Below are positions 20,989-53,200 of a stretch of 64,000 nt of DNA, in pieces. Position numbers and translations under genes: made by a program. Below the pieces are notes generated by a model. It was given only the letters and a program-made list of their open reading frames with translations. It searched no databases and was not told the origin of the DNA. The DNA lies in NCBI RefSeq assembly GCF_964194025.1, contig NC_134473.1, positions 74,648,001 to 74,712,000 on the forward strand. Reading direction: 5' to 3'. The DNA is from Convolutriloba macropyga. Its lineage: Eukaryota. Numbering within the stretch: the first letter of the stretch is position 1; each line of letters opens with the position of its first letter.

Positions 20989-23900
20989 CTATCGCTGAGC
21001 GACGTTGATGCTGCGCTTCAGCGGGTTTTGTGGAGCTATAGGCTGAGTTGACAGAATGACCGCTAAGTTGGAGTGCCCGTGAACACCTGTCTGTTCAGGC
21101 TGGAACTGTGAGTCATACTCTTCGGCTGACAAAACTCTCGCTCTCACAGGAAGTGTGAAGATTTCTACCTGGAATGAACAGATTCTAAATCATGAATAGC
21201 GAAAGAAATATTAAACTGCCCGGGTTGAGGTTTGAAGGCTAAAATTTGCAGAAGAAAAAAATGAAGAATTGTGGTGAATACAGTCACCATTTCAAGGATT
21301 TAGCTTGCAATTTTCATCAAAACTCAGGGATTTGAAAAAATTTCTGAACATTTATGCAAGAATTGCGGCGAATGCGGTGAATAAAAGATTGAAAGAAAAA
21401 CATGCTTCCAGGCGTCACTTGATTAGATTTTTCAGAGCATATTGACGACCTGTCAAATTTAAGCGATGTGTTCTTTTTCTGTATATAAAACCTTGATTAC
21501 TGGGGAAAAAATGATAATGTTCCGTTTTTCAATTTATTTTGAAAAGTTAAGTTTATCTGATAATGACTTGCGTGAAATGTCCGATATTACCGGTCATTTT
21601 GCATTTGTTTTTGAAATTCATAAAGAAAAACAATCACTGCACTAACACTATTTAGTAAAAGGTTTATAAAAGGACATCTTTTTATTGACAAGAATCGGGT
21701 TCATTATTATCAGATTATAAGAATTGTGCTTTACCTCCGTAGTTATAATCAGCTCATGTATTAAATCGTCTTCCTGAGCTGTCGGCTTATTGCCCACGTC
21801 AGAAGTTTGCCCAGCCGCGACTTCATTCTCGTCTTTTGGGTTCGCCAGGGCAAACAAAACGAGCTCAAGTTGCTGCGACATTCCGGCTGCAACCGCCCCG
21901 GGGGGTTTGTAGTTAACACTTAACCCCGTTGAGAGTGGGGGAGATTTCACTCTAAATCGGCAGTTTTCAAGCCCTATGTTTTTCACCATAATGTCAATTC
22001 CGTATGTATATCCCTCTCTTAAAGTTCCGAAGTTGAGTTTTGTTGGACGAACTAAGAAGCCACGAAGAGCGCCCATGTGACTTGGGTTAACAGCACCCGC
22101 GATTGACGTGGTGTTGGATCGCCTCTTCACAGGGTTCTCAACTCGGAGAAACTAAACGGAGACCAATATTTAATGCTTTGAACATGTTTACAACTTCGGT
22201 GAAATAGCCATCTATAATCATCTATAATTTGTTTCTTTTTACAATTCAAAGAGTTTGAATTGTATTGGGGCGCTGTCGTTTTTTTAAGATCTGTTCACAC
22301 ATTTTCATGATTTTTGAAGTCAAATTGGAGTTGTGATTTTGGTCACGCCGAAACAGGAAATGGAGCGAAAAAGCGAGTGGTTTTGCGGCGTGAATTTTTT
22401 TCGCTCTTATTTTAAAGTAGAGTGAGAAAACGGTGTTTGAACAAAAATTCGGTTTCTCGGTAGTGGTTTTTTGTTCACATGCGGCAATTTCACTCTGATT
22501 TTTACTGTTTTTTCGATTTTTTGGATCGGATTTTTTCTAAATGGTTTTCCCAATCCATTCACAGCTCATTCTAGGCCTAGTTTTTTGTTTGAATTAAATT
22601 TTCATTTCTCGCTAGTGGTTTTTTTGTTCACATGCGACGTTTTGACGTTGATTTTTTGTTTTTTTTTTCCTATTTTTTGATCTGATTTTTTTAAAATGGT
22701 TTTCTCAATTCACTCATAGTCCATTCTAGGTCTAGTTTTTCTGTTTAGTCGATGAAAATTCTTTGAATTGTACGTCAGGAGTTGTCTGCTATGATTTTTG
22801 TTACGACCATATGACGTCACAGCCACTTTTTGTTCATTCGTTCAGGCAATTTCAACAAAATTGCATGTGTGACGTCATTTTTCGCTCATTTTTAGTGGAG
22901 CGAGTTTTTTGTTCATGCGCGTGATTAAATTTTTGGTCACACTTGACTTACCTCACTCTCAAAAATGACTTCCTCACTTTGAAATTGACTTTTATTTACT
23001 TTAATTCAAAGAGGTAAGGTCAAGTGGGTTTGTGTCACTCTAAATGAAGGTTATTTGAGATCAGCTAGTAGAGGCAGCAATAACTTATTAGGATTTTTAA
23101 TCAAAATATAACAGATCAGCCTTCAATGAAAAGACGAATTTTTTTTGGTCTGTCTTTTTTACTGTTTTTCTTAGACTGCCGATCTACGACTCCATTGCGG
23201 CTATTTTCCGGCAGTCTGCCAGCTATGTTATTAACTTAATTGGCTAACAATTAACCAAGCATTTACAGAGGATAGGATGTATATAGTCCAAATGATTAAA
23301 AAAAAACCCTTTTTTAATTTTATTTTAGCCATTTTTATTTCAATTCTTCTGCACTGTTGAGTTTATAAATGGTGCTTAAAGTAATAATAATAGTCAAAAA
23401 AGATTTTGCTTGAACAGTTTTTTTGGTTCTATTGCGCTTTAGTTTTTAATTAAAGCGCAAATTTTAAATAATCTTTTGTACGACTTTCTATTGTAATGAC
23501 AGTCTTTTTGCTATTGTCTAGGCTGTTTCTGTCTTGCCATGCTACGTATTTATGGAAAGGTATTTATGGAAGTGAAGTGAAATGTAAAATCAAAATTTTC
23601 TTATACAGCAGCAGCATAAATTATCATCGTACAGTTCCTAAGAATTTATTACCGTTGAATCTAAATTGGATTGATCACATAGCTTAAGTGAAAATGTTCC
23701 CCCTTGCAAATTTCTAGTGGTCTGTTTCAGGGAAAAATTTCCTCTCCTTTTCATCGGGAATGAGTGGACAAGTCAATTCTTGTGCTATTAAAGGCAGCAG
23801 CATGTTCTTAGCCAGTGACCACGTGTACAACAGGTTCGTGGACTTGAAAAAGAGAGAGACTATTACTTGTTAACAGACAAAATCAACTCGCTTTGTGTGT

Positions 23901-26900
23901 TGAACACGTCGGACTCAGACATGCGGGCAGTGCTAGCTTCACACATTTTCATGATTTTTGAAGTCAAATTGGAGTGGTGATTTTGGTCACGCCGAAACAG
24001 GAAATGGAGCGAAAAAGCGAGTGGTTTTGCGGCGTGAATTTTCTTCGCTAAAATTTTAAAGTAGAGTGAGAAAAAGGTGTTTGAACAAAAATTCGGTTTC
24101 TCGGTAGTGGTTTTTTGTTCACATGCGGCAATTTCACTCTGATTTTTACTGTTTTTTCGATTTTTTGGATCGGATTTTTTTTAAAATAGTTTTCCCAATC
24201 CATTCACTGCTCAATCTGGACCTAGTTTTTTGGTAGAATCAAAATTACATATCTCACTAGTGGTTTTTTGTTCTCCCTAGCAGCATTTTGACATTGATTT
24301 TCTGTTTTTTTTTGTTTTTTTCATCTGATTTTTTTTTAGAAATGGTTTTCCCAATTCACTCATTGTCCGTTCTAGGTCTAGTTGTTTGTTAAGTCAATGA
24401 AAATTCTTTGAGTTGTACGTCAGGTCTTGTCCTGCTACGTTTTTTCATTTCTTCTTACACCAAAGTTTTCACACGGACCAAACTTTTCACATCAAACTTT
24501 TCGTGGAATAAATCGAGTTGCAATCGGAAATTGTTTCCTTTTTTCCCTTTTTTTGTTCCTCCCGGTAATATAAAGTAATCAACAATAAATATGGTTATAA
24601 AGGTATATATTAATGCTAATGGTTAGCCTCACTGCTTATACGTCTATATAGATCAATATCAAAAAAAATAATTAGTTTGGTCATTCAAGCTTATGAATAG
24701 AAAAAATATACACGGCTGAAAAAGGAACAGTGCAATTTAGTCTTAGTTGATTATCATAAGGGCATTCGGATCTATTCTGTCCCCCCCCCCCCAGCTTAGT
24801 GAGCACAATTTTTTATGACCCCCAGGCGCACGCTGGGGGTCATAAAAACACTGGGGGGGGGGGGGGGCGAAACCGAATAGATAGATGCGAGCATTCAAAC
24901 AGCCGGCTGAAAATTGCAGCTTTAACAAAGTCGACAATTTCGGTATGCAAGTTTTCACTTTATGGCAATGAAAAAGATTTTTCAAAGAGTTAACCTTTTG
25001 ATTAGGTCTTCTTGTTGGTCCTTTATCAGTTTCATTTTCAATCTCCGTGACGTCATTTCCTCCAAGTCGCTTATCTATTCCAGTCTCGTTAACATCCTGC
25101 AATTTTTCAGGCCTTTCGTCCTCGTGTTTCTCCTTCCCAGCTGAAGATTCATATAGAAGTTGTTGGTTGTTCACGTTTCCAGTCTGTTGCTCATTTTCTG
25201 CAAAAGCTGCTCGATCCGTGTCATCTTGTGGCTCATCAATGATTTGAGAAGTTTCGATCTCTGTCTCCTTCAGCTTATGTTGCCTCTGAAAAGAAGCAAA
25301 ATTGGGTCTTTCCCGTTATAGCCCCCCTTCCCCATGAAATTATAGCACTCCCCATTAAGGTACATTTACCATGATGGGGGGTATAGGTTATCTGATCACT
25401 AAGCTGGGGGGGGGGGGGGGGGTGGGGGGGTTGGGAGGGCTATAATGGGAAAGACCCGTAAAAATTTGGTAACATGTTTGTTCAGGGGTATATCTAAGTT
25501 ACAAAGCCTTTGGTCAAGTCACTCAGAACTTAAACCAAAAGCCGTGTAGATGTTCGAGATTGCTAAGATGTACAAAGTGAACTTTGTGGAGCAACGTTAT
25601 CGATTTAAAAAATGAGTTTCGCTTTTTCAATAAATTTGATTTTCAGTCAACGTATCTAAAAAATTTTTTAAAAGACACTGTAGAGAATCGGCATATTTTA
25701 AAAGCACGTGCGTGATTTCAATTTAATTGAAGCTATCGTATACTGTTGTTGCATCTTTTTTTGTTGGAGCCTGCTAATCTTTAAAAACTCCAATGTCCTC
25801 GAAACATAATTTATAGGGACTGTTCAAGAACCAAATATTCAAATTCGAGTTTTTTTGTGCGAACATTTTAAATAGATAAAAATTGAACTCGACGAACAAA
25901 TCATCTACCTTGCCCCTTTCAACTCTAAGCAAGTTGCACTTTTCAATTAAACAGAGTACGCTGACAACTATCCTTTTAAACTTGCGTCCTGTAGAAATAA
26001 GTAAGCAAAAGCCGTAAAACAAAGCCAGGCTGTTACACATATAGAACAAGCCCAGACCTAATGCAAGTCAATATCAGTGCCGGGAACGTCTAATTTCAAG
26101 TCTTACATCAGTACTGATTCAATGATATGATCATGTCACTTCTCACATTTAGCTGTCTAAATACCAATATAAGTCATGACGTGAACGTTTAAATACAAGT
26201 CTTGGCCAAGATGTGCAGCTCTTAAAATTCCCATCAAAAAGTCCCAAAAACGCCAAAATAGGCCGGGAAAATGTCCAAAATTTGCCGAAAACGCCAGCAA
26301 TAGAAAAGAAATTGTCAAAAACTTGGAAAATTTTTGTCTGAAATAGTTCCGGAAAGCGTCAAAACACGTCGCAAAAACAGCACATAAATGAACTAAAAAG
26401 GCAAAATAGCCAGGGAATTATTAAAAGTATGCTGTGCAATCGTCAAAAACAGCATAGAAATTTTCAATAACCGGGAAGCAGTCTATAAATGAGACAGGCC
26501 CCTTTGACACCATGGAGCTAGTTTGTCATTCGTAACATCTATGGCTTCATTTACAAGTACCCTGAGAGAAGGGCTAAAAACGAAGCATTGTTTTTAGTTC
26601 ATTAAAAAACTGTTTAATTTTTTTCAAGTTCTTTTACTTTGGACATTTGCGGTAAACTTTGAATCCATTAGAATGAAACTATTTTTTTCCATTGTATTAA
26701 ATGTTAAAAGCTAGTAATAAAATGAGGAAAGAACAATTAGAAGCATACAAACTTTCAGCGGGTCATTGAAGTCCCAATTAAAAACAAAAAGAACTAGAAC
26801 AAAAAAGAAATCGTACCTCAAAAACTCTTGTGACCAAATGCAACATCATAATTTAGAAAACAAAACACACATTAATGAAAGTGCCATTTTTCAGCTTTTC

Positions 26901-29303
26901 GGCATCAAGGAAAGACGGAGAAAACATTTTTGAGAAAGAAATTATCACGCAAACGGACAAAGAATTGAAAAAAAAATTCTGATAGACTCAGTCAGAATTC
27001 ACATATGAAACATTTTTAAGCTCGAGTGCAAAATAATTGGCAGTTGATGGAAATATTCAAACACAAAGAATGTCCAAACACCTTTAAGGTCCAAACACAA
27101 AGAAATATTCAAACACAAAGAAGGTCCAAACGCCTTTAAGGTCCAAACACAAAGAAAAGCGACAAAATAGTCCAAAAAAATTCAGAAAAAAAAATTTCAC
27201 TGGAATTTTGCTGAATTTTTTCAAATAAATGTCTTCAGAACCTCTCCTGCTAAAAACTAAAAAACAATTAGGTTATGCCCTACAGAAATCTTAGGTGCAT
27301 GTAAGACGCAATCAGAGACAAAAGATCAAAAAAACAGTCAAAGGGTTTAAATATATTATAATATGTTAAATTTGCTAAAATTTCTATAGGCTTTGAATAT
27401 TTAAACCGCTATTTTGTTGCAGAACTTTACATAATAATCATCTGCAAAATTTAAAGAAGTTCATTTTGTCGATGAAGCTTGGAAAACACAAAAAAAAGCC
27501 CAAAAATTTTAAAAGTTTAGAAAAAATGCAAAACTCACTAAGAATTTTTGTTGTTAAAGTTAGCTCTTACCAACACATATATCTCGAAAATTCTGTGCCT
27601 CAATACGTTTGCAAGCAAACAGTATTTCGTGATCTACGAGGGACCTTATTTGAAGAGTGAATTTAATTATTTTCAAAGTTTTTTTACATACATCCAATGA
27701 GCTTTCAAATGGTGCCGCTCTTATCGTTCTAGAATATATCACAAACTTGGGTGCAAAAATTGAAAGACAACCGATAATATAGTTCTCCCGGCGAACGCAA
27801 AGGAAGCCGAAGTAAAAGTAAGCCGACAGAAAAGCAAGCCGAAAGTTATGTAACAGTTATGTAATCTATCAGAAATAATACATTGTTAGCCGTTGCAATC
27901 AATAATGCGCGTAGTATTATAGTGCATAATGTATTCGGATGCATCAAAGAAACAAAAATACGTCAATTTTTAGACATCTAGTGGGTACGGGCCTTAGCAC
28001 ACGGGCTGTCCATTGCCATGCCTCTCATCCGCTGTGGGATGTAATCCAGAAACCGTGGGCCGGTTATCACGCCGAAGCCGCAACGCGCGCCCACCGGCCC
28101 GCCAGAGGCAACTTAAAATACGGGTATCCCAAAATTTTTCGGCTTATTTGACCTCATTTTCAAAATTCGGCTTGCTTGCCTATCGGCTTGCTTGACCATC
28201 ATCAGTTCTCCCATTCCCCATAATGTAGAAACAAAATGGAAGGTTTTACTGTTTCTCCCATTTCAGGAAAATGGTGAGGTCTTAAGGAGCAAACTCTGCA
28301 ATGATTTGGTAAATTACATTGGTTGGTAACATTAAAGAAAAAAGACATGTCAGGTTTTTAAGCATTTTTTCTTGGCAGTTTCGTGTTACAGATTTCAATC
28401 TCAATTTATTGCAGCCTACTTGTCTTTTTCAAAATTTGAAAATTGTTCCTGGCATTTTATCGGGATTCAGATATGCGCTGATCTAGCGAAATACACGGGT
28501 ACTCAGCGCCCTGTTAAAAACGGGAAATTGATAATAGCTTTTCCGTTTCTTGATTAGATTATCTGTTTTTAAAATACCTGCTTCTCGGCGTAGTAAGGCA
28601 AATCTCTTGTGGCGTCCCTCAGCTCCTGGTTGATTCCCTGGAACCACAAAAATCTTTCATCTCGTATCTTGTTCAAATCTTGTTTCATGTATCTATTTCC
28701 AGCGTTTGCTTGAAATTCTTTTTTGAGACAGCGAGTCTCCATTGATTCTGGAATGTCTATCGTGCATTATATCAGAATGATGAAAGATATTTCATGATCT
28801 TGCGCAATTAAAATTCCTGATCTCTGAGCTTCCTCGATCAAAAATTACTGAGTTACGGAGTTATAATACATATTATTATAACGTTTATTTTTTAAGCTAG
28901 CCCTGTTAGTTCGAGAATTGTATGATAAAATTGCTCAGATTTACCTCAAAAGCAACCCAATTCAATGTTCACTTAGAAAATCAAACCAAAAATTTTGCAA
29001 TAATGACATTGTCACAAAAAACTCAGTAAAATTCATAAAAATTACAAACCTTTGAATCGCAAAGAGAAGCAATGGTCTATTTGCAGATTTAATTACCAGC
29101 ACTTTCAGAAAGAAAAAGTGTTGTCAAGATATGTGCGTTCAAATATTACTCGCTCACAAAAAAATTTGAAAAGCGAAAAATATTAGTTTACCATATTCCT
29201 CTGTTGCTTGACGAATTCTTCTGCCAAGTATGACTGGAAGTAGGGCGGGATTTCTTTGTTCCTCAACTTCCTCTTGTTATCTATCTCCTTCATTATCTCT
29301 TCC
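20989..29303 (-). CDS. SPAG17: Sperm-associated antigen 17 (SPAG17/PF6)-like protein, C-terminal part; exons 29303-29192, 28637-28578, 25285-24995, 22151-21735, 21168-20989; 5' end unresolved
   Basis: Phase-consistent GT-AG exons give EEIMKEIDNKRKLRNKEIPPYF...PNQK/FLRVENPVKRR...[83 protein letters not shown]...stop. This matches from memory the PapD-like C-terminal domain of SPAG17. Confidence 0.85.
22240..22799 (+). mobile_element. Non-autonomous Helentron-like (HINE/DINE-1-type) element, family 1
   Basis: 5' palindrome tacaattcaaa-gag-tttgaattgta (22240-22264); 3' subterminal inverted repeat ctttgaattgta (22761-22772) followed by a degenerate CAGGAC/GTCCTG stem-loop; T-rich flanks. Confidence 0.7.
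23938..24445 (+). mobile_element. 5'-truncated copy of HINE-like family 1
   Basis: High identity to 22294-22799; ends ctttgagttgtacgt-caggtcttgtcctg-ctacgtttttt. Confidence 0.75.
24761..24890. mobile_element. MITE-like element with C-run/G-run subterminal tracts and an internal 16-bp hairpin
   Basis: atctattc...gaatagat inverted ends; tttttatgacccccag (24810-24825) pairs with ctgggggtcataaaaa (24833-24848); cagcttagtg motif shared with the elements at 25304 and 42241. Confidence 0.65.
25304..25457. mobile_element. MITE, ~154 bp
   Basis: TIR gggtctttcccgttatagccc / gggctataatgggaaagaccc (20/21 match); cactaagctg plus G-run inside. Confidence 0.8.
27055..27157 (+). repeat. Short imperfect tandem repeat array
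   Basis: Reiterated caaacacaaagaa and cctttaaggtccaaacac units. Confidence 0.75.
27790..28204. mobile_element. Non-autonomous DNA transposon with aagccga subterminal repeats and a candidate 9-bp target duplication (Mutator-like)
   Basis: Three aagccga motifs at left, three tcggctt at right; agttctccc at 27781-27789 and 28205-28213. Confidence 0.55.
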
Positions 29304-30642: not shown

Positions 30643-30665
30643 NNNNNNNNNNNNNNNNNNNNNNN
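30643..30665. other. Assembly gap (23 N)
   Basis: Run of n. Confidence 0.99.
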
Positions 30666-36164: not shown

Positions 36165-39100
36165 TTAAACAATTTTACCATCAAGTTTATGCTCAGTTTC
36201 AAACGCGTCAACTTTATTCGGTTGATGCAACTTTATGCTCAATGGTGAAACCGAGCTCTGCGCTAGAGAGTTTGAAGCCAGTCGCTGACTGGGTTCAAAT
36301 CTGTCTCGTAATCTTCCCAGGAGGACATTAAGCAAATTGTTCTCGTGAGGTTTGGTGATAGCGGGTTCCATCTGTGGAAAAGGGTGTCCCACAATTTCCA
36401 ACACACATCTGCAAACAAAAAAATCAATTTTGCTTTATCTTAATTGCTCATTGTTCTGTCTCCACAGAATGGAGGGGGATACTCAGGTCAGTTAGAATTA
36501 TACCAAATAAGGGAGAAAATTTCAAAAAGCAGAAGCAATTTTTTGCAAAAGAAATTTCTGAAATCAACTCCCCGCGGCGCGGAATATCATCAAAGAAGCT
36601 TTATAAGGATCGAAAAGGTTTGCACTCAAAAGAAGTTAGCAACAACTTCTTTTGAGTGCAGACTTCAATCTCTAGATCATCTACAATTTGATGAAACGGA
36701 TGAATTCAACAAATTGGAAACCAGAAAAATGAAAACCAACACAACTTTAAGTGTATCAATCCAGGTAATTCATTTTTAATGCAGAAACCGCCTCACTTTG
36801 GTGCTCGGATTCAAAGGAGACTGGCGATAAGATTATTAATGTCTGGAAATTCTGTGAGAAATAAAAATGATAATTTCAATTAACAGAAAGGGTAGTAGTA
36901 GCACACAGGGGGGTATGTGCGTGTGTATGTGGGGGGGGGGGGGGGGGGGGGGTACTTATGTTATAAAAATAAACTGATTAGTAAATGAGCCCCCCATTCT
37001 GTGTCATCTGTTGTCGCCCTCCAGTTATGTAAAAAAATGCAGGTGGGCCTGGGTCACGAACTGTCATAAGCCAACTAAGCGGGGGGGGGGGGGGGGGGGG
37101 AGGGGGGAAATAGATCGGATTTTGTCACATATGTACCAGACTTAGTTCAGAACCGTAAACCAAAAAAATCAGCATATGCTCGCATTACTATTAGTTTAAC
37201 ATAAGTAATGTATTTTAATGAAACTTTGAAGTAAAGGTCAGCAACTGGACTTCAACTGTTCTGCACTTGCTTTGATTTATTTACCTGGATTTCGAACAGT
37301 TCTAGGATTTCTTTTATATTCAAAATATATTACAATTTTTGTAAGGGCAGAGAAAGGGATCAAAAACCGACTGTCCAGGCTAAACTCATGAAAAAAATGT
37401 TGTCTGAGCTAATTCTGCAAAAAACCTTGGAATCCTATGAAACAGTACTTATATAAAATTTTACTATTGGAATATTGTGCGTCAATAATGGTTTACTATG
37501 AGACTAGGGTCCAAGTCTAAACAAAAGTTTCTAAGTTCACTTCTACATAAACCATAGCTGGCAGATTGCCAAAAAACAGCCGCAATCGGTTCGAAGATCT
37601 GCAGTCTCAAAATGATAGTAAAAGAAACAGGCCAAAAACGAAACTTATTGAATTCTGAGATTTTCTATTTTGATTAGGAATCTGTTTCACTTATTGCTGC
37701 TTCTATAAGCTGCTCTCAAATAACCTTCAATTAGGGTGATGAAAACTCACTTGACCTTATCTCTGAATTAAAGAAAATTTCAGATTGAGTAAGTAAATTT
37801 TGAGAGTTAGGTAAGTCACGTGTGACCAAGAACTTATTCACGCGCATGAACAAAAAACTCGCTTCACTAAGAGTAAAAAATGACATCACGCACGCCTTTC
37901 TGTTGCAAATTGCATGAAAGAATGAACCAAAAGCAGATTTGAAATCATATGGTCGTAACAAAAAGCTTGACGCCAAAAAAGAGAAGAACAATAATAGCCT
38001 CAGCTATCGCTTTGCGGCTATTAAAAACAACCCACAGATTGCCCGAAGACAGCCTTGATAGACTTTTTGACCTTGATTGGAAACGAAACCAGTAAAGAAA
38101 AAGGAGAGAAATTGAGATAAGTAATTAAGATAAGTTGTTGAGATAAGAAATTGAATCAAATAAGAGAAAAGAATGCTGCTAAAACTTCGATTGCCGTGAT
38201 TGATGTACAAAAAACTCAAATCCTGAAGCAGTATTACCAAGTTCAGTAAAACAAAAAGCAAACAATTCCCAACTCTCAAAATTACTATTTTTTTTATCGT
38301 ATCAACTAGATGGATTCTCATTTTTGTCAAAACATGATATACTTTTCAAAATCGTGCAAACGTACGATTTCTCCAAGAGGACATTTTATTGCAAAACTAG
38401 ACCTCATTTTTACCCTTCCTCGATTATATAGAACAAAATGGGTAACACCTGAGTGGTAATCGTTATTTTCCTCGAGTTTACTTCACCTATTGATACGGCC
38501 AATTTAGAGATTTAAATTTTTTTTTGGGTTTTGTTAGATTTAGGGCAATTTATTTCCAATATAAATGATCTTTTTCGCAACTCTCACGAACATTTAATTA
38601 CTTTCAGTGCCTTATTGAGCGTGAGTTGAGTCGAGAGTAGTCAAAAAAATTCAAAGATAATCCTGAAACAGCTGAACTGAAGTCAGTCTGACGTCACAGT
38701 TCGAAACAAAAAAAGTTGAGCAAAAAACGACCAACTAGCGACTGTAAAATTGCTCTCAAGCGACTGGCGAACGGGGGATGGCGGTCAAGTGACTGAGGGC
38801 GACCAACTTGTCAGGTGGAGGTGGAGTGTTGGAAAAATCGTTCGATCGAAAAATCGCATAAAAAAGACCACAGGACTAATAGTATTGCTTCAAACTTTGT
38901 TTGCGAGCAATTACACAAGAAAAGTCCAATGACAGCAGCGCTCAACTATAGCCGTTGAAACCATTATAAAAGATGCATGAATCCACAAGTCACCGGTGTT
39001 TTTATATCTTCGGGTCCAGTGAAAGAATCGAATAACGACGGACAAATTGCTCTCGAACGACAGGTGGGACAATTCAATTCAGGAAAGCCGGTCAAGAAAA

Positions 39101-42100
39101 GACAGACGTTTACAATAATTGCTTCAAATTTCAAGTAAGAATTTAAGTCTGTTTCTAAGTAAAAATTGTACCAACTAATGGTATGGTGATTCCTGTCAAA
39201 CTTCGGATCCATTTTCATAATGGGGAGAACAGGTTTCCAAAGAAAACTAGTTTTTTTATGCAAAAAAAGTTAAACCTCATTTTAAAAAAATATATTTGAC
39301 CTCTTGGAAGAATTTTGGCGATGTTTTCAGTAGATTTCTGCTCAAGTATGTGTGCATTCATACTTTTAAGGATAATATAGTGAGACCGAAAACGAGGCCT
39401 TTTCATGAGCTGATTTTATTGATATTCGCATAAATGACTCATCGTGCTATGATATCCTGGTTAGCCTACAAAAAGCATTTTTTTCCTCATAATCACAGAT
39501 TTGTCATAAATGATTTCCTGTTAGTAATATTAGTCTCATAAGTATTAGATTTCCATGATCTTCAATTATTCATGCAAGGATCATAAATGATCTCTCGGTA
39601 ATCGTACAAGATTTTCATGCCATCATATATGCTCCTTGTATGCTTACTCACAAGTGGCAACCCGAGATCAGTTGAAGATAAGCTCCCGATTCATCGATTT
39701 GACGGAATAGGACACACAATGCCACAAGTCAAGTCGAATGCGCCGACAACTCTATGTTGATGTGAAAATATTTGATCAATGAACCTCTTTGATTGTTGAA
39801 AAAGCACTCGCCAAAAAAACTTTCAAGACCAATTAGTCGGCCAATCTAGTCACGAGGGCATTGTAAACAACACTTACACCCATTTGTTATATATTGACAC
39901 ATTATATTTTGTAAAAGGGGCAAGAGGTAATGGGGAGGGGCAATCTCCGAGAAGATTCGTCAATTTCAACGATTGATTGGCCAGAATTGCTAAAAGAGTA
40001 CATAAATCTGACCTTTCTCTTCCGTGACCAGGGGTGAGCCCATCGCTGAGAGGACGCAACCTGTACATCCTGGTGTATGATCCAAATGTCAACTGAGAGG
40101 TCTCAAAACGAGGCACAACCACTTTGAACAGTTTATGAATCAATGCCTTCTCATTAATGTAGTAGTCTGCTAACTTCATGGCTTCAGGATCCTGGAAAAA
40201 GAGACGACACTTGCATAAAAGTTATGATAGGAATGCCTTTCTCGATACTAAACGTTGGCAAATTTGTTGAAAAAATCTGTTGCTGCAGACTGTGATATTA
40301 AGTAAATTTCTTGCCAAAAAGTTCAGAAGCTTCTCAAACCCTAGAAAAATAAACCCTGTCACAATTGGCTTAAAACCTGGAAATTTCGATAAATTTTAAT
40401 TACATTAATAGTCTATCTAAAAGCTCATTCATCTCTTATGGAGCATGTCGGTATATAAAAATTACAAGCATGAAAGAGTTAGGCACTTACCGTGCGGAAA
40501 CTGGTGGTATATTTCAATATATAAGCAAAATCATTAAATAGACAACTAAAATACAGTACACGACTATTTGAATTCACTCCAGCATTTTTACTTAATAATA
40601 AATTGTTTACGGATTACGAATGATACAAAAGGGCATTTACATAATTTATTTTTTTTCAAATGTCACATGCGCTCCGAAAGGACACCATTGACCTCTATGG
40701 ATCGTTTTCAGGTGCCTTTGTGAGGAAGATAAACAAAAAGAGTTTGTTGGGTTAATGCAGGGAAAATGACTTAGTATGTGTCTTAAAAAAAACTTCACAT
40801 AAAACCAAAGCCCAACTCTTGGAGTTAAACGGCAGTATACAGCTTACAAATATTGATGGCTCCAATCAGCCAAAAATATAGTTTTTTACACTAGTACCTT
40901 TGGACCATAAAGTGCAGCAGTGTGTATGATCCTCTCAAGGTACTGTCTGACCTCTTGACCTCTATTCAAATGCATTTCCACCCTCTCCCACTTGATAAGG
41001 TTAGTTACGTCATCCTGCAGCTTACTCATACGCGTGTAAGGTCCACCCAGTCCCTCTTTACGATCTGAAAGCAATGTCAATATTCAATCAAGCTCCACAT
41101 TTATTTCCACAGTAATTGAAACAATGCATTTTGAATCATTGATGTTATTTCGAATAAATTAAAAAAAAAATTAGTGATAAATCATCGCGGTTATCAAAGA
41201 TAATTCAATTTTTTCGAATGAACCAACAAATTGACGTTCGATCAGAAAACGTTTTATATTTTGCTGGTGCGTAGTGAGCAATAAGGAAAAAAACATATTT
41301 TTGATTCAATTCTACTCACTGGGGGGGGGGGACTATATCCGATCGATATTTCTCAAGCAGAACGATAAGAGATGGTGTCAGTAGGAATGCTCATCGAGAG
41401 TTTAATTAGTGAATTTTTACATTTGGTTTCTTAGGAGTTATCAAGGAGCAAATTTCTGATATCTATCGTTTGATTACCGGAAGTTCGATCATTCTAATGT
41501 CAATTTCAGTCAAATTTTGATTATTTTTTCAAAAATTTATTCTATTTTGCTGTTATCCATTTTATCAGTCATTTTATACTACTGGATACTCAAAAAAATA
41601 ATATTGGAGCTTAATATCAGGCGCCAGAATTCAGGATTTAGGAACGAATAATAACCAGTAACAGCCGAATCGTTACTGAAGACTAAAAATTTTTACAAAA
41701 TTTTGCTTCGAGGCCGCCCAGCTCTGCTTTTCTTTTCACAGAAAATCCTTGAGTGCAATGGTTTAAACAATGTCAGTTGAATTTTAAGATAACAAATTTC
41801 TTTTTTTTGAAATACGGTCACAAATAGTCTATATAAAAACTGCCATCAATATTCATTAAAAATTCTTAAAGTGTGTCAATGATTTTTTTACAAGCTCATT
41901 AATTTTTTGAGTTGATTTTATCTCATTTTCGCCCAGTGGTTGATAATGATTATTTGCAATTCATATCCAAGCACGCACAAAAACATACCGAGTTGAGAGC
42001 AAAACTGACTACGGTTGGCTAGGAGTATAACAAATATTGAGATAAGGGGGCAACGACTCAAAGGCAACGAATTACGTCCACAAGCAGCAGCACCCATAAG

Positions 42101-42587
42101 AAAAAGTAGCTCAATTTAAATCTAAGCTTAACCTAAATTACATACATGCTTCGGATTTTAAACCTAAACGAAGCTTATATTCCAACAGGATTCGCAAGTT
42201 CCGTTGTTTGGAAGGCGCAGACAGCGAAACCATCTTTTTTGGATCTTTTCCGTTTGACCCCCCCCCCCCCCCCCCACAGCTTAGTGGGCGCATATTATTT
42301 GCAACCCCCTAACGCACGTGCCATATTTTTACATAATGATTTACTATGTAATGACAAGTGCTCTGTAACTGGGGGGCACAAACGGAAAAGATCCTTTTTT
42401 TGTACTAGTGATTACACTAACTCTGTGTTCTCTCATCCATTATTCTGAACCCTCGGTGTGGATTTACAAACCCGTCTCTGCTCTCCTTGTGGAGTGGGGG
42501 AACATATCCAGGCCTCTTAGCCACATAGGGCGTGAACTTCCACCTGGGCATCGGATACCTGTGCTTCCTGTGAGAAATTGGAGCCAT
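36165..42587 (-). CDS. MRPL17: Mitochondrial large ribosomal subunit protein bL17m; exons 42587-42422, 41064-40898, 40191-40013, 36408-36165 (251 aa)
   Basis: Phase-consistent GT-AG splicing (756 nt): ...RKEGLGGPYTRMSKLQDDVTNLIKWERVEM..EVRQYLERII..YGPK/DPEAMKLADYYINEKALIHKLFKVVVPRF..SYTRM..GRER/CVLEIVGHPFPQM..NLLNVLLGRLR; L17 motifs recognised. Confidence 0.92.
42241..42394. mobile_element. MITE, 154 bp, in MRPL17 intron 1
   Basis: Perfect 16-bp TIR ggatcttttccgtttg / caaacggaaaagatcc, C-run plus cagcttagtg, T-run flanks. Confidence 0.85.
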
Positions 42588-46994: not shown

Positions 46995-47064
46995 CTCATT
47001 TTTATCAGATTTCTCATTTTTATCAGATTTCTCATTTTTATCAGATTTCTCATTTTTATCAGAT
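46995..47064 (+). repeat. 18-bp tandem repeat, ~4 copies (ctcatttttatcagattt)
   Basis: Direct inspection; lies 150 bp downstream of the NIPSNAP stop. Confidence 0.97.
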
Positions 47065-47214
47065 AACTGTGAAACCAGTTACAGGCAATACGGGCAGAAT
47101 TAGTTTTGTACCTTCTAAATATAAAAATACTACGAAAAATAAATATATTTCTGCTCATGAAAACGATAACTCAATTCGTGTACTTCAGCCTTCAGTTGTT
47201 CATCCGTTTAAATG

Positions 47215-50200
47215 CTATTGCATGGGTGAAACAGGCAAGGGATAAATAAGGCTGGAACTAGACTTGGACTCATGCAACACTTTCTCATTGTCAGCCAGAA
47301 GTTGGTAGCCAGCATCCACGTCACTGCAGTTCAACACTGCATAGACAGCCCCTACTGGATCGCCTACCACTACCTAACCAAACATCTAATATTTGTAAAA
47401 AAAATTATGGGAATATCAATAAAATGGTTGTCACATTGAAAATCGCTCGTTTTTTTCGATTTAATTTCCTGGATAATAGTTTTAAAAAACCCTAAATCCT
47501 GTTTCGACATTCACGCAGAAGCATGTCAACTATTTCTACAAATACTGCTTCAAAAAAAATATACAAGCAGATGATTGTTACCAATTGCAGCCGATCTGAT
47601 TCGAAAAAAGTATCAGAAAAACTTTTTGTATCGACGGGTAGTACAATAAAGTTTTACCTTGAATTTAGCCAAAATAGCAACTGATTCAGCAGAGTTTTCT
47701 GGAATGCAGAAGTTGTCCAGAAAAACGTTGCCAGCATTTTGTGAATAAATGTAGTAGTAGAAACCAGGTTTGAAGACAGGCTCGTCAGGTACTCGTCCTA
47801 TATTCTACACAACTCACAGAGATAGAGATTTATAGTGTTTGTTCAGAATGTTTCCAACTCTCAGTTTAAAATCAAAAAGTCAAGAATCTATACTCAAGAG
47901 TTAGGGCATTTACGTTTGGCACTACTTGGATGCACACTATTGATCTTTAACTAGTAAATGTTCATAAAATTTCGTGAAATAGTAAAAGTTCATAAAATAG
48001 TAAGATCGTTACGTGATCTCAGAAGTCATTTTTAGCGGGGTAAGTCACGCACCTTACCTAAAAGCAGAAAAAATGACGTCATGTGCACATCTTTTAACAG
48101 CAAAGCAGTAGAGGTCACTAAAAGTCACTAAAATTCCAAGAAGTCACGTCGTAAGAATCATCGATGGAGACGACGAATTAAAAAACATAGCAGGACAAGT
48201 CCTGACGTACAATTCAAAGAATTTTCATTAACTAAACAAAAAAAACTAGACCTAGAATGGAATATCAGTGAATTGAGAAAACCATTTAAAAAATCAGATA
48301 AAAAAAAAACAAAAAAAAACAAAAAATCAATGTCAAAATGCCGCATGTGAACAAAAAAAACTACTGTCGAGAAATTAAAATTTAATTCAAACAAAAAACT
48401 AGGCCTAGAAAGAGCTGTGAATGGATTGGGAAAACCATTTAGAAAAAAATCCGATCCAAAAAATCGAAAACACCGTAAAAATCAGAGTGAAATTGCCGCA
48501 TGTGAACAAAAAATCACTACCGAGAAACCGAATTTTTGTTCAAACACCGTTTTCTCACTCTACTTTAAAATTAGAGCGAAAAAAATTCACGCCGCAAAAC
48601 CACTCGCTTTTTCGCTCCACTTCCTGTTTCGGCGTGGCCAAAATCACTACTCCAATTTGACTTCAAAAATCATGAAAATGTGTGAACAGATCTTAAAAAA
48701 AAAAAGACAGCGCCCCAATACAATTCAAATTCTTTGAATTGTAAAAAACAGGACAAGTCCTGAAACACAATCCTAAGAATTAAATGAAAAACTTAGAAGT
48801 ACTCTACCTGACCAGCAGATCAATTAAACAAAGCCAGCCAAAACACAAACAAACTCATCTCAAAAAGTTTAGAAACTAAAACAAACAAACCGAACAAAAA
48901 TATACTCATTGCTAAAACTCTTGAAGCTTATACCCCGAAGGCAAAATTTGATCCCTTTGATGCCTATTTCAAAAAAATGTACAACACCAACTCTTGTCTC
49001 TGAAATCGGTCCAGTGTTATATCTGCAAGACCTAAAAAATATCCATTGGCCCTTGAAGATCGATTAATTCACAAAATGACAGAATATAAAAAAAATTGAA
49101 ATCAAATAGAAAATTTTAATAATGTTGCCGAAAGTCGTGATATTCATATCTTCAGAAAAATTTCTGCGTCTCTAGAGGATATTCAGTAACCCAACTGCAA
49201 GCCTAAAAAATCCATTGGCTCAAAGATCGATAAACTAGGTAAAAAACAAAAATTTTCAGAAAAAAATTCAAATTTTATCAAAAATAGAACTCCATTCTAT
49301 TAAAATATTGAAAACCACTACATTACGCTTAGCAACTATTTAAAAACATACTATTAAACCCAGGAGGACGCTACCTGGCTAAACTAAACAAATGTTTACA
49401 AAAAATTTTGAAAATTGCGGATTTCATCAAAAAAAAAACTTCAAATTCAAAATGTTTAATTGCTGGATACAAATCCATTGATACTAAAAACCATGCAGTA
49501 ACTCTTTATGAGACCATGGATTAGGATTTCTGGTCCTTAAGACTAGACAAAAATTGACAATTTTATGAAAAAATGAAAAAATTACATATTTTATCAAAAA
49601 AGCTAAAATTCGAGACATTAAAATGCTGAAAACCATTCCATAATACTAAAAACTATGCAATGACCTATAATCAAACCCTAAAGGAGATTTCCTTGCCCAT
49701 GAAGCTGGAAAAACTCAGAATGACAAAAAATTTTCGAAGAACTTAAAAAAAATTAGTATCACTTTGCGTGTTTGTGTTTGTAGTACCAAAACAAAAATCT
49801 CATAAAATGGTCATAACAAATCATTTTGGCTCACTGCAGACCTGCATCAACTTGTAAAAAGTTCAACCTAAGACTAATCAAACAGAGAAGTCAAAAAATC
49901 ACAGAAAAAAACCAGTTTGAGCTCAAAAACTCCTATAAATGACCATTTAACCTTGAATTAAGGCCATCCCGGCAGTTGCACCACTCTAAGCACTTGAAGG
50001 GCTGCTAAAGCCCACTTTGGGCCTCTAATGAAACTTAATGCCCGCAGGGCTTTACCTGTTTATCTCGTTTTGAAAGATGAAACACATTTAAAAATATGTG
50101 AAAACATCTTAAAAAGACAGCGCTCCAATACAATTCAAATTCTTTGAATTGTAAAAAACCACGATTTACTCAACAATAGCCGCTATCGCTTCGCGGCTAT

Positions 50201-53200
50201 TTATAAATAAACAGAAAAGGTCATTTTTGAATTATGAACACCGAATAATTGAATAAATAGATAGATAGATTAATAGATAGAGAGGTAGGAAAAGCACACA
50301 TCATGAACTAAATTTAAATTCACGCCACGTTAATTGGTCGAATTGAATTTGGCCTGGGTCGTTCAAAAATTTGGCCTGGGTTCCTCAAAATTTGCCCTGG
50401 GTCATTCAAAAGCTTATTGTAACATACCTTTTATTGTTACATTCGCATAAACATCAACCACTTTTCAATGTAACATTCGCATAAGGATGATTGAGTATCT
50501 CATTTCTTTGACTGCTAGCAAGCATAATTTGAACAGATACAAGTTTATGGTAGGTAGCACATGGCGAAGAAAATCGGTAAAAAATTCTTACTTAAAAAGC
50601 TAAAAAAGTATAACCAACGCTGGCCGATTGCTTCGTAGAGCTGTAGTCTGAAAATACCAAAAAATGCGACCTAAAAACCATGACAAACACTAACTGATGT
50701 CTAACTTGATTTGGACTTCTGTATTGTTTTCAAAAGTTGCTCTCAAATAACCTTCAATTATATTGATATACCCCCATTTGACGATCACTGCTCATATTGA
50801 AGTAATTGAAGGCATTTTGAGAAGAGAGTGAGGAAAGTCTTGACTTAAAATGTATCCATGCAAATGAAACAAAACTCGCTTCAATAAGTTTCAATAATGA
50901 CACGCAAGCCTCAGTACAAAATTGTATCAAAAAGTGAACAAAAATGATTTGAAGTGGTCATTGGAAGTCCTGAACTCAAGTCACTAACTGAACACCAACA
51001 AAACCTAGCAAAGTCAGAACAGCCATTTAGATAAAATTCCGATTAAAAAGCTCCAGTTAAAACAAGCCAAAACAATCCGAACGTGAACAATAATCATTAT
51101 CACAAAAATAAATTTTTCAAGTACCGTTTTGTTAATCAGCTTGATTCGAGTGAAAAAAATTCACGTCACAAAAGTATTCGCTTTGTTTTGCTCCACTTCT
51201 TGTTTTAGCTTGATCAAAATCACCCATCCATTTTGACTTCAAATATCAAACATAACCGACAAAAACGTCGGAAGAACTTCTTTCGAACGACTAGTGCGAG
51301 CTCTAATCAATTGCAGCCTGCTTCAGTCGGGGGGGGGGGGGGCTAAATCGGACTAAAAAGCTCAATAGTAGGCTTCAAATAACCACATTAGTGGTTGACA
51401 TATACCACTATTAAAATTTAAAATGAAAAATGGCACCAGTTTCGGCGCACTTTTCAGTTGACTCTTAGTACTAAATTGCCGCCAGTTGAGTTCAGCTGTT
51501 TGAAATTGTGATTGAGAGAGAATTTTAGATCACGCGAAACGCAAAAAGTCAAGGGCGTAAAAGTCATTCGAAAAGTCAAAGCCCTCAAGCGAAAGTTTCG
51601 CATAAAAAGACACACACGTTTACAATAATTGCTATGAGCTTCGTTCAAGAGCAATTAATAAGAAGTGTAAACAGATCTTGAAAAAGAAAAAGTAGCTAAG
51701 ACCAAGAGACGGCCAAAAGTAGCTTGCTCTCCTCAGCAATCGCAGCTATTAATAAAATTTATATTGGTATCCAAACTGTTTGCAAACAATGCTTGTTCGG
51801 CTGCCGTAAATTGACTTCAGCGGCTGAAAATTGTGAATTGAGTAATTTAGATGACGCACAACTTAAAGAGATCAAGGGTGAAAAAATCAGAAGGAAGTCG
51901 ATGAAGGAAAAAAATCCCATTAATAAAGACACGCATGACATTAATACCTTCGCACTTTGTTCGAAAGCAGTTAAAAGACACACTACTGCAGTAACTGCAG
52001 CAAACTTAATTGGAGAGCAGTTAAACACTTAAATCGTTTAAACAGGTACTGTCAGTTTATGGAAAACATCTTCGGTCACGATGAAATCGGTCCAAACTGA
52101 TTATCGGGACAATTAAGAATTAGGAGATCGCTTAATGATCAAGTTGACCAAACTTCACACGTGACTCAATTACTGCTGCTCGTGGTAAATTACAGTTCAC
52201 CATTTGTATTGTCAATATACAAAAAAAATATCAAATAGAAACATACAAAGCTCTTCAAAAAATGACAGTTTTATCATTTAGAACTTCGGTTGTGTGCTGT
52301 TTTTTTGTCGCCGATGAGTTTTTACTGACAGGCTAAAATCGTCTTTCAAAAAACTATATACTATTGAAACTGATTAATTAATATTTCTCAATAACAAAAC
52401 AAATCGATTACGCAAAACCAATCTTTAGTTCGTAAGAACCGCAGTGATATCACTATTAGCCATTACCAAAAACCAAAACAGGGCATGAAAATCAATGGAA
52501 ATTACAATTGTAAGCTCGCAATTTTAATTAACATTGAATTGGACGGCGGTTCACTGGCAAATTTTAAAGAAGCCACCGTATTATACTAGCAAATTAGCAT
52601 CCTTTAAACGGTTTTATTTTTGCGCTATTTTTTATCTCGAACCCTGCAAAGATGGCTCGTCTGCCACTGCCAAGTGTCGGCTAGTTTGGGATAGAATGCA
52701 GTCCACCTCTCATTCCCAGCCAGAGACTGTCTAACTGCGGCCCTCTCAGCCACACTCGGGTAGGGCCAGATATGGAAAACTTGGCTTAGAGTTCCCACCT
52801 CTGTTCGCCAAGAGCCAAGCGGCTACAATCAGGTTCCAAGGAACTGCTGCTAAATTTGAATTCATTGCCAAAATCTTTTTTATTAATGTTGCACTGTGAA
52901 CATACTGCACAATTAAAAAAAATTCGAAGTAGAGACTACTAAAGTTATAAAATAGGTATAACCAACCAAAAAAAGCAGAAGCTTTCTGTGAGTTTTCTGT
53001 GTCTTACTTGCCGGAGCAACATGTTTTCTCAGCATAGGATTTTTCACTATAGGAAAAGTTTCACAAACAACACTCACAATTACCATCACTTGGGGAATTC
53101 AAAAATTAGAAAAAGAATGTCATTCAAAAAATAATCGAGTCAAAAAATAATGGGTTAAAATATTTTGCAGTACAGCTACAGTTCCTTGGACGCTTTCAGC

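What the first reader, a model, noticed from the sequence alone, without database searches (positions are those of the whole stretch)
21169..53190. Introns with self-complementary ends: the 5' splice site pairs with a segment 11-21 nt upstream of the 3' AG in three unrelated genes
Seen on the transcribed (minus) strand, allowing G-U pairs. NIPSNAP intron 1: UCCAAG|GAACUGUAGCUG pairs with 52835-52852 (17/18; 18 nt from the +1 partner to the intron end). NIPSNAP intron 2: GCAGG|GUUCGAGAU with 47816-47829 (12/14; 16 nt). NIPSNAP intron 3: GUAAAA with 47395-47400 (6 bp; 21 nt). MRPL17 intron 1: GUUAGUGU-AAUCA with 41076-41090 (8+5 bp; 11 nt). MRPL17 intron 2: G|GUACUAGUGUAAAA with 40206-40220 (14/15, four G-U; 15 nt). 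MRPL17 intron 3: GAAAG|GUCAGAUUU with ~36418-36431 (13/14; 14 nt). SPAG17 28577-25286: GAGAAGCAG|G (10 bp; 14 nt). SPAG17 24994-22152: UUAA..CUUUGAA with 22170-22182 (11/13; 17 nt). The other two SPAG17 introns pair only weakly. The stem sequence differs in every intron but the register is similar, and many deviations are those tolerated as G-U in RNA. Inference: an intron-encoded stem juxtaposes the splice sites across 0.3-4.8 kb of repeat-filled intron, near where a branch point is expected. It could be a splicing-definition mechanism or a relic of transposon-derived introns. End-paired introns are known from euglenid nonconventional introns and from Fritillaria and Amoebophrya transposon-derived introns; I do not know of this arrangement as a general feature of ordinary GT-AG animal introns.
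Basis: partly seen in the sequence, partly recalled or inferred. Interest (0 to 1): 0.88.

Follow-up and report, generated by a model that had tools for sequence, protein, structure and literature searches.

The report
One stem-closed intron, nine ordinary ones
In three neighbouring genes of the acoel worm Convolutriloba macropyga, one unusual intron (it starts GA instead of GT) really is clamped by a strong stem between its two ends, while the end-pairing claimed for the nine ordinary GT-AG introns is about what chance gives and disappears in a second copy of the same genes.

Summary
The intron junctions match RefSeq proteins of Convolutriloba macropyga and intron-less homologues in related acoels.

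Only NIPSNAP intron 1 clearly exceeds chance. It is GA-AG, not GT-AG. It has a 12-bp perfect stem (17 of 18 bp in all) and is the only intron whose end stem survives whole-intron folding. Both arms are unchanged in a second copy whose intron interior differs by about 9%.

The nine GT-AG introns pair better with their own acceptors than with others (p about 0.004), but this rests wholly on G-U pairs. With Watson-Crick pairs only, p is 0.40. In a second copy of five of these introns the excess is gone (p 0.46), and one claimed partner is deleted there. Five orthologous introns in related acoels show none (p 0.9). The "similar register" appears in 53% of mismatched donor-acceptor pairs, because exon ends pair with polypyrimidine tracts. 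Three MRPL17 introns keep a nominal, untestable signal.

No RNA reads were obtained: the runs laid were DNA. The scan had already noted stem-closed non-GT introns elsewhere in this genome, and intron 1 joins them. A general feature of ordinary introns is not supported.

The parts
52823..53184 (-). NIPSNAP intron 1, 362 nt, GA-AG. The same mRNA would also result from GG..TA or AG..GT cuts shifted by 1-2 nt.
   Evidence: An in-frame TAG just upstream of 52822 fixes the acceptor, and no phase-0 GT donor exists. The junction KASK|PLGSW equals RefSeq XP_075248243.1 and matches the intron-less homologue P0001, KASSPLGFW.
53173..53190 (-). 5' arm of the intron 1 stem: the last 6 nt of exon 1 plus intron +1..+12.
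   Evidence: 17 of 18 pairs with a 12-bp perfect core. The duplex energy of -27.0 is the best of 100 donor-acceptor combinations. The stem is in both the MFE and the centroid fold. There is no difference in the second copy.
52835..52852 (-). 3' arm of the intron 1 stem; it ends 12 nt before the acceptor AG.
   Evidence: Same evidence as for the 5' arm. The last 36 nt of the intron are identical in the second copy, while the interior differs by about 9%.
47805..52642 (-). NIPSNAP intron 2, GT-AG, 4838 nt, filled with very high-copy repeats. The claimed 12 of 14 pairing uses 47816-47829.
   Evidence: Energy is -15.4 in the window copy. The partner is removed by a 10-nt deletion in the second copy, where the energy is -8.5 and -7.4 for the assembled contig.
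47374..47657 (-). NIPSNAP intron 3, GT-AG, 284 nt. The claimed pairing is 6 bp.
   Evidence: Energy -4.9, weaker than the mismatched pairs (z +1.18).
41065..42421 (-). MRPL17 intron 1, GT-AG, 1357 nt. It is absent in the relative L004.
   Evidence: Exons 1 and 2 are continuous in L004. The pairing of -14.9 is sense-strand specific (antisense -6.1) and G-U-rich.
40192..40897 (-). MRPL17 intron 2, GT-AG, 706 nt. The claimed pairing is 14 of 15 with four G-U.
   Evidence: p about 0.01 against random 45-mers. With Watson-Crick pairs only the energy is -4.6. The stem is not in the whole-intron fold. The ortholog in L004 does not pair.
36409..40012 (-). MRPL17 intron 3, GT-AG, 3604 nt. The claimed pairing is 13 of 14 with four G-U against a U run.
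   Evidence: p about 0.012. With Watson-Crick pairs only the energy is -3.7. The ortholog in L004 does not pair.
28638..29191 (-). SPAG17-like intron A, GT-AG, 554 nt.
   Evidence: The junction follows from XP_075248242.1. Pairing is at chance.
25286..28577 (-). SPAG17-like intron B, GT-AG, 3292 nt. The claimed stem is 10 bp.
   Evidence: Two disruptive, uncompensated changes lie inside the stem in the second copy; the energy goes from -13.1 to -9.5.
22152..24994 (-). SPAG17-like intron C, GT-AG, 2843 nt (497 nt in the second copy).
   Evidence: A 6-nt indel at the donor shifts the claimed arm in the second copy; the energy goes from -9.7 to -7.5.
21169..21734 (-). SPAG17-like intron D, GT-AG, 566 nt. 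It is absent in the relative L003.
   Evidence: The exons on either side are continuous in L003. Pairing is at chance.
30643..30665 (.). Assembly gap, outside all ten introns.
   Evidence: It lies between the MRPL17 stop at 36165 and the SPAG17-like start at 29293. It was not filled or bridged.

Best explanation
The window holds one real stem-closed, non-canonical intron and nine ordinary U2-type GT-AG introns.

NIPSNAP intron 1 starts GA and ends AG. An 18-position stem closes the intron. It is formed by the last 6 nt of exon 1 plus the first 12 nt of the intron, paired with a segment that ends 12 nt before the acceptor.

Inferred mechanism: the stem holds the weak GA 5' splice site next to the 3' end, and so makes up for poor U1-type recognition. 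The normal spliceosome can then use the retained AG acceptor. Shown here: the stem, its rarity, its stability in whole-intron folds, its conservation between two diverged copies, and the GA-AG junction in the annotated protein. Not shown here: that the stem is needed for splicing, or the cutting chemistry.

For the nine GT-AG introns, the listed pairings are the kind any purine- or G/U-rich donor region forms with a U-rich region upstream of an acceptor in AT-rich DNA. They are not maintained.
For: NIPSNAP intron 1:
- Duplex energy is -27.0, against a mismatched-pair mean of -9.1 (SD 3.0).
- It has a 12-bp perfect Watson-Crick helix, against a maximum of 10 in 90 mismatched pairs.
- An inverted 12-mer at this spacing occurs in 0.065% of placements.
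- 25 end-to-end pairs are in the MFE and 20 are expected in the ensemble. No other intron keeps its claimed stem.
- The first 20 and last 36 nt of the intron are identical in the second copy, while the interior differs by about 9%.
- The junction equals RefSeq XP_075248243.1 and the intron-less homologue P0001/L001.

GT-AG introns:
- With Watson-Crick pairs only, the cognate mean is -6.29 and the mismatched mean -6.28 (p 0.40). On the antisense strand p is 0.17.
- The longest Watson-Crick helices are 5-7, against a null mean of 5.6.
- In the second copy of five of these introns, cognate is -9.0 and mismatched -9.1 (p 0.46).
- The intron 2 partner is deleted there. The SPAG17-like intron B stem carries two uncompensated disruptive changes.
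- Five orthologous introns in relatives give cognate -8.2 against -10.5 (p about 0.9).
- A mismatched pair reaches -24.3.
- The register of 11-21 nt is seen in 53% of mismatched pairs.
Against: - In the window copy, the nine GT-AG introns do pair better with their own acceptors. The permutation test gives p 0.0036. Shuffle z-scores average -1.2 for cognates and +0.13 for mismatched pairs. Windows from the same intron give Fisher p 0.01-0.025.
- The excess is stronger on the transcribed strand (p 0.015), as RNA-level pairing would predict.
- MRPL17 introns 2 and 3 have 14-pair helices longer than any of the 90 mismatched pairs, and I could not obtain their second copy.
- The five introns from relatives come from other species, which may lack the mechanism.
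- No RNA reads were seen here: the runs laid were DNA. The GA-AG junction therefore rests on the RefSeq protein and on homology.
- Conserved intron ends are common in ordinary introns, so conservation of the arms is weak evidence for a role of the stem.
Confidence: 0.75

Rival explanations
1. General RNA-level end pairing. In this acoel most introns, GT-AG ones included, carry a weak, G-U-rich stem between the 5' splice site and a segment upstream of the acceptor, and this stem helps to pair splice sites across long, repeat-filled introns.
For: - Cognate excess in the window copy: p 0.0036 without intron 1, and shuffle z -1.2 against +0.13.
- The cognate-specific bias to the sense strand has p 0.015.
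- All three MRPL17 introns rank first or second for their partners.
Against: - There is no excess with Watson-Crick pairs only.
- The excess is gone in the second copy of five of the introns, with deletions and uncompensated changes inside the claimed stems.
- It is absent in five orthologous introns of relatives.
- The stems are not in whole-intron folds.
- The register is non-specific.
- Without MRPL17 the remaining six introns give p 0.09.
- The hypothesis was formed on these same introns.
Confidence: 0.1
2. The intron 1 stem is only a scar of how the intron arose (a foldback or hairpin insertion, or an old transposon with inverted ends) and plays no part in splicing. The GA donor is used directly by a tolerant spliceosome.
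For: - The intron is absent from the homologue in a relative.
- Intron presence differs among these acoels at 5 of the 10 positions.
- Tunicates splice GN-AG introns without any reported stem (10.1101/2025.08.15.670264, abstract; my own knowledge of Oikopleura).
Against: - The intron is single copy by read depth and has no related sequence in the window or in four fetched loci of relatives or of the second copy, L001-L004.
- The arms are offset from the intron ends, and the 5' arm includes 6 exonic nt that encode ancestral residues. I found no target-site duplication.
- The arms are unchanged while the interior has diverged by about 9%.
- In this window the only non-GT intron is the only one that is strongly paired. 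Notes from other windows report the same link (unchecked here).
Confidence: 0.25
3. Spliceosome-independent excision triggered by the inverted repeat (SOS-splicing-like, ligated by RTCB) removes intron 1.
For: SOS splicing recognises paired inverted repeats in mRNAs and gives non-GU-AG junctions in or near the repeats in C. elegans and human cells (PMC12779559). Intron 1 has such a repeat and a non-GU start.
Against: - The 3' end keeps a canonical AG 12 nt outside the stem.
- The annotated mRNA needs one precise in-frame junction, whereas SOS splicing is described as imprecise.
- No DNA transposon is recognisable in the intron.
Confidence: 0.07
4. Everything, the intron 1 stem included, is chance pairing in AT-rich DNA.
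For: Heavy tails exist: one mismatched pair reaches -24.3, and 2 of 2500 random 45-mers reach 17 pairs when G-U and one mismatch are allowed.
Against: - The 12-bp perfect Watson-Crick core has a placement frequency of 0.065%, and it coincides with the only non-GT donor among the ten introns.
- The arms are conserved.
- The same arrangement was noted repeatedly elsewhere in this genome.
Confidence: 0.03

Closest known systems
Euglenid nonconventional introns
   Same: They have non-GT 5' borders, and the two intron ends pair in the RNA and are brought together (review PMC11282704).
   Different: Euglenid introns lack the AG acceptor and the polypyrimidine tract. They pair at +4..+6 with -8..-6, often carry TSD-like repeats, and leave as circles. 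Here the AG acceptor is kept, the stem is 18 positions long and starts 6 nt inside the exon, its 3' arm ends 12 nt before the acceptor, and nothing is known about the excised form.
Transposon-derived non-canonical introns (Fritillaria borealis MITE-derived introns; Amoebophrya introners)
   Same: They have non-canonical borders, sit at lineage-specific positions and have inverted repeats near the ends (PMC11282704; PMC7789003 listed).
   Different: Those belong to multi-copy families with terminal inverted repeats and target-site duplications. NIPSNAP intron 1 is single copy, has no relatives in the sequence available, has arms offset from its ends, and shows no target-site duplication.
SOS splicing of DNA transposons (C. 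elegans, human)
   Same: It is RNA-structure-directed removal of a segment bracketed by paired inverted repeats, with non-GU-AG junctions (PMC12779559).
   Different: SOS splicing is imprecise, appears independent of the spliceosome, and acts on recognisable transposons. Here the annotated product needs one precise in-frame junction with an AG acceptor, and no transposon is recognisable.
GN-AG non-canonical U2 introns of tunicates (Oikopleura and relatives)
   Same: They have a G at +1, a non-T at +2 and a normal AG acceptor, in an animal (10.1101/2025.08.15.670264, abstract; my own knowledge for Oikopleura).
   Different: I know of no report that end-to-end stems are part of that system, and the lineage is different (Acoela). 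My two searches found no paper on non-canonical introns in acoels.
Stem-closed non-GT introns noted elsewhere in this genome by the scan
   Same: They have GA, GG or GC donors whose 5' end pairs just upstream of the AG. Follow-up agents report RNA support for some (s1-217420, s1-214594, s1-250063, s1-258988).
   Different: Those notes are unchecked by me. Some of them report shared terminal repeats or transposon-like inserts, which this intron does not show.

Membership tests
Ordinary U2-type GT-AG introns (nine of the ten) | GT at the start and AG at the end, at junctions that restore the reading frame | tested here: met
   Searches give the coordinates. The spliced products equal the RefSeq proteins or their length.
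Ordinary U2-type GT-AG introns (NIPSNAP intron 1) | GT (or GC) at the start | tested here: not met
   No phase-0 GT or GC donor exists. The junction AAG|GAACTG...TGTAG|CCG is required by XP_075248243.1 and by the homologue P0001.
End-paired non-canonical introns (euglenid type) | Non-canonical borders at both ends and no polypyrimidine tract | tested here: not met
   The 5' end is non-canonical (GA), but the 3' end is a normal AG.
End-paired non-canonical introns (euglenid type) | A stable structure that brings the intron ends together | tested here: met
   A 17 of 18 stem, present in both the MFE and the centroid fold. The register differs from the euglenid +4..+6 / -8..-6.
End-paired non-canonical introns (euglenid type) | Excision as a full-length circle, after the conventional introns | not testable with these tools
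   No RNA reads were available; the runs laid were DNA.
Transposon- or MITE-derived introns (introners) | Many similar copies in the genome | tested here: not met
   Read depth over intron 1 equals that of the single-copy exons, about 30-36. There is no related sequence in the window or in four fetched loci, L001-L004. Old, strongly diverged copies elsewhere are not excluded.
Transposon- or MITE-derived introns (introners) | Terminal inverted repeats at the element ends, flanked by a target-site duplication | tested here: not met
   The arms are offset: the 5' arm starts 6 nt inside exon 1 and the 3' arm ends 12 nt before the intron end. The only repeat shared by the two borders is AG.
Transposon- or MITE-derived introns (introners) | Lineage-specific position | tested here: inconclusive
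   The intron is absent from the homologue in assembly ERZ25071366, but that copy lacks all three introns and could be a retrocopy.
SOS-splicing substrates | Paired inverted repeats of a DNA transposon inside an mRNA | tested here: inconclusive
   A paired inverted repeat is present, but no transposon is recognisable.
SOS-splicing substrates | Dependence on AKAP17A, CAAP1 and RTCB, and independence from the spliceosome | not testable with these tools
   This needs experiments. The features are taken from PMC12779559.

The most novel reading that the evidence does not exclude
A weak, G-U-rich pairing between the 5' splice site and a segment upstream of the acceptor is a genome-wide, RNA-level property of ordinary GT-AG introns in Convolutriloba macropyga. 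The strong stems of the GN-AG introns would be its extreme form. Splice-site pairing across long introns in this animal would then be partly structure-guided.
Probability: 0.1. Interest if true: 0.85.

Novelty: new variant of a known kind. Interest (0 to 1): 0.4.

Why it matters
If ordinary animal introns used an encoded stem to pair their splice sites, that would change how intron definition is understood. This window does not support that. What remains still has value. It is a clean, annotated example of a GA-AG intron closed by a stem in an acoel, a lineage for which my searches found no report of non-canonical splicing. It adds to several similar cases the scan has noted in the same genome. 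Together they make one question testable: does an RNA stem substitute for a proper 5' splice site? The work also shows that five of ten intron positions differ among related acoels, and that two copies about 9% apart are available. Both are good material for dating such introns and for covariation tests.

Tried and rejected
- RNA confirmation. Both run searches returned only runs of one study. Laid on 47301-53300, they were DNA: flat depth over introns and exons, and no splice joints. That used the single read-laying run.
- Spliced protein from transcripts. The search with P0001 found only P0001 itself.
- An independent set of introns from the same genome. A retroelement ORF was on one contig only. 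Ten repeat ORFs were not in the collection. The RefSeq listing shows no further genes in the window.
- The second copy of MRPL17. The exon 1 ORF is not on record, and the second-copy contig has no called ORF to walk from.
- An alternative MRPL17 intron 1 (a GG-AG or GT-GA donor near 42560). It is rejected because the 45-residue N-terminal stretch is conserved and continuous with exon 2 in L004.
- A CT-AG alternative for NIPSNAP intron 1, one codon later. It is rejected by the RefSeq protein and four homologues.
- A base-composition explanation of the cognate excess. GC, purine and keto content are uncorrelated or negatively correlated between cognate ends, so composition alone does not explain it.
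- Transposon ends for the 2.3-kb indel in SPAG17-like intron C: none seen.
- Literature on non-canonical introns in acoels or Convolutriloba: none found.

Full report
**What the window is.** The window is AT-rich (36% G+C) and has two N runs. Exact look-ups place it in Convolutriloba macropyga (Acoela), record OZ077304.1 of GCA_964194025.3, at about 74.648-74.712 Mb. Four protein genes lie on the minus strand:
- an intron-less SmD3;
- a NIPSNAP gene (Pfam PF07978);
- MRPL17 (PF01196);
- a 349-residue gene that matches only the C-terminal PapD-like part of SPAG17, residues 2143-2248 of PDB 9ijj chain x, E 1e-23.

**The assembly gap.** The gap at 30643-30665 lies between the MRPL17 stop (36165) and the start codon of the SPAG17-like gene (29293). 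None of the ten introns or their claimed partners touches it.

**Junctions.** I rebuilt the exon models from reading frames and splice sites.
- The NIPSNAP model equals RefSeq XP_075248243.1 residue for residue.
- The SPAG17-like model equals XP_075248242.1.
- The MRPL17 model has the annotated CDS limits and 251 residues.

Intron-less relatives give independent support.
- A 219-residue homologue (P0001, 71% identical over exon 2) is a continuous ORF in assembly ERZ25071366. It aligns without gaps across all three NIPSNAP junctions.
- The exons flanking SPAG17-like intron D are continuous in the same assembly (L003).
- MRPL17 exons 1 and 2 are continuous in ERZ25074608 (L004).

NIPSNAP intron 1 has no GT. 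An in-frame TAG fixes the acceptor at 52823/52822, and the protein requires AAG|GAACTG...TGTAG|CCG. That is GA-AG, or the same mRNA from cuts shifted by one or two bases. I obtained no RNA reads. The only runs found were DNA, with flat depth over introns and exons and no splice joints.

**Are they more than chance? The window copy.**
- The cognate mean is -13.3 and the mismatched mean -9.1 (permutation p 0.0004).
- Without NIPSNAP intron 1 the cognate mean is -11.8 (p 0.0036).
- The result holds for most window definitions that straddle the junction. It is not significant for the exon part alone or for the wider intron-only windows (+1..+25 and +1..+40), but a short intron-only window (+1..+15 against -30..-6) still gives p 0.008.
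- Dinucleotide shuffles give cognate z-scores averaging -1.2, against +0.13 for mismatched pairs.
- GC, purine and keto content of cognate ends are not positively correlated.

So the window copy does carry a cognate excess.

**What the excess is made of.**
- With Watson-Crick pairs only, it vanishes for the nine GT-AG introns: -6.29 against -6.28, p 0.40. On the opposite strand p is 0.17.
- The longest perfect Watson-Crick helices are 12 for intron 1 and 5-7 for the rest, against a null mean of 5.6 and a maximum of 10.
- With G-U and one mismatch allowed, MRPL17 introns 2 and 3 reach 14 pairs. That is p about 0.01 each against random 45-mers. The other GT-AG introns have p 0.09-0.96.
- The sense-over-antisense bias is cognate-specific (p 0.015) but is carried mainly by the three MRPL17 introns and SPAG17-like intron A. 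Without the MRPL17 introns the remaining six give p 0.09 for sense-strand pairing.
- Heavy tails exist: a mismatched pair reaches -24.3.

**The register.** In mismatched donor-acceptor pairs whose best helix covers +1, the partner of +1 lies 11-21 nt from the 3' end in 53% of cases (mean 17.5). In cognate pairs it is 5 of 8. The shared register is therefore the default result of exon ends and 5' splice sites pairing with the polypyrimidine tract. It is not evidence for a designed stem.

**Replication.** Contig assembly ERZ25071359 holds a second copy of this region, either the other haplotype or a homeologue. It is 83-92% identical to the window across most of the aligned introns and flanking DNA.
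- For the five GT-AG introns available there, the cognate energy is -9.0 and the mismatched energy -9.1 (exact permutation p 0.46). The same five in the window copy give -12.2 against -10.2.
- The NIPSNAP intron 2 partner is removed by a 10-nt deletion. This is seen both in read contigs and in the assembled contig, and the energy goes from -15.4 to -8.5 when the acceptor is rebuilt from the read differences, or to -7.4 for the assembled contig.
- The 10-bp stem of SPAG17-like intron B carries two disruptive, uncompensated changes.
- Intron C has a 6-nt indel at the donor.
- Five orthologous introns in the two more distant assemblies, whose sequences are independent, show no cognate excess: -8.2 against -10.5, p about 0.9.
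- In whole-intron folds the claimed stems of the short GT-AG introns do not appear.

**NIPSNAP intron 1 behaves differently in every test.**
- Its energy of -27.0 is the best of 100 combinations.
- A perfect inverted 12-mer at this spacing occurs in 0.065% of placements in the window, at two loci, one of which is this intron.
- The stem closes the intron in the MFE and in the centroid. There are 25 end-to-end pairs in the MFE and about 20 expected in the ensemble.
- In the second copy the first 20 and the last 36 nt of the intron are unchanged, while the interior differs by about 9%. If sites changed independently, that would be expected about 0.5% of the time, although intron ends are often conserved anyway.
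- The intron is single copy by read depth and has no related sequence in the window or in the four loci searched, L001-L004.
- The 5' arm includes six exonic bases that encode residues aligned with the intron-less homologue. The 3' arm ends 12 nt before the AG. I found no target-site duplication.

A simple picture of a MITE with terminal repeats therefore does not fit this intron.

**Interpretation.**
- *Most likely (about 0.75).* There is one stem-closed GA-AG intron of the kind the scan has already noted at other places in this genome (unchecked by me). The other nine are ordinary GT-AG introns whose listed pairings are opportunistic.
- *Mechanism for intron 1.* I infer that the stem presents a poor 5' splice site next to the 3' end for an otherwise spliceosomal reaction, since the AG acceptor is kept. 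This is inference, not shown here. A passive scar of the intron's origin (about 0.25 for that sub-question) and an SOS-like, ligase-based excision (about 0.07) remain open.
- *Residual general reading (about 0.1).* A real, weak, general pairing of GT-AG introns remains possible, because the window-copy statistics are nominally significant and the MRPL17 second copy could not be obtained.

**Comparison with known systems.**
- Euglenid nonconventional introns share end pairing and a non-GT start, but lack the AG and pair in a different register.
- Fritillaria and Amoebophrya introns are multi-copy, with terminal repeats and target-site duplications.
- SOS splicing recognises paired inverted repeats, but is imprecise and acts on transposons.
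- Tunicate GN-AG introns share the borders, but no stem is reported for them.
- I found no paper on non-canonical introns in acoels.

**Verdict.** The interpretation as a general feature of ordinary introns is not supported. The one real case is a new variant of a known kind and had already been flagged separately in this window (s1-208253).

Noticed in passing
window 20989-53361, compared with L001, L003, L004: Intron presence differs among related acoel assemblies at 5 of the 10 positions. All three NIPSNAP introns and SPAG17-like intron D are absent in ERZ25071366. MRPL17 intron 1 is absent in ERZ25074608. The empty sites read AG|GT at two of them. Whether these are gains or losses is not resolved.
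   Followed up: partly
L002, L007, L011 (assembly ERZ25071359), compared with window 12000-58900: The contig assembly of this animal holds a second, collinear copy of the region. It is 83-92% identical across most of the aligned introns and flanking DNA and carries kilobase-sized indels. It is either a very divergent haplotype or a homeologue.
   Followed up: partly
window 20989-29293: The C-terminal PapD-like part of SPAG17 is annotated as a stand-alone 349-residue gene (XP_075248242.1). MRPL17 and NIPSNAP lie directly upstream on the same strand. No upstream SPAG17 exons are annotated or seen in the window.
   Followed up: partly
window 47900-50300 and 51100-51700: Repeats inside NIPSNAP intron 2 have summed word depths of 10^4 to over 10^6 in the DNA runs, against about 20-50 for single-copy sequence. 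They are among the most abundant repeats of this genome.
   Followed up: no
window 22375-24736: A 2.3-kb segment in SPAG17-like intron C is missing from the second copy (intron 2843 nt against 497 nt). It contains two copies of a repeat (about 24203-24051 and 22565-22410). No inverted ends were seen at its borders.
   Followed up: partly
L003:8226-10006: The ortholog of SPAG17-like intron C in the more distant relative has a consensus GC-AG donor (AAG|GCAAGT), where C. macropyga has GT.
   Followed up: no
window 42422-42587: MRPL17 carries a 45-residue insertion after the conserved N-terminal ISHRKHR motif. It is conserved in the relative L004, so it is coding and not a missed intron.
   Followed up: yes
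window 58177-58596; 61276-64000: There is an intron-less SmD3 gene (139 residues) whose protein sequence is identical in both copies of the region. Beside it lies a BEL/Pao retroelement that runs off the window end and is annotated as a gene in RefSeq.
   Followed up: no
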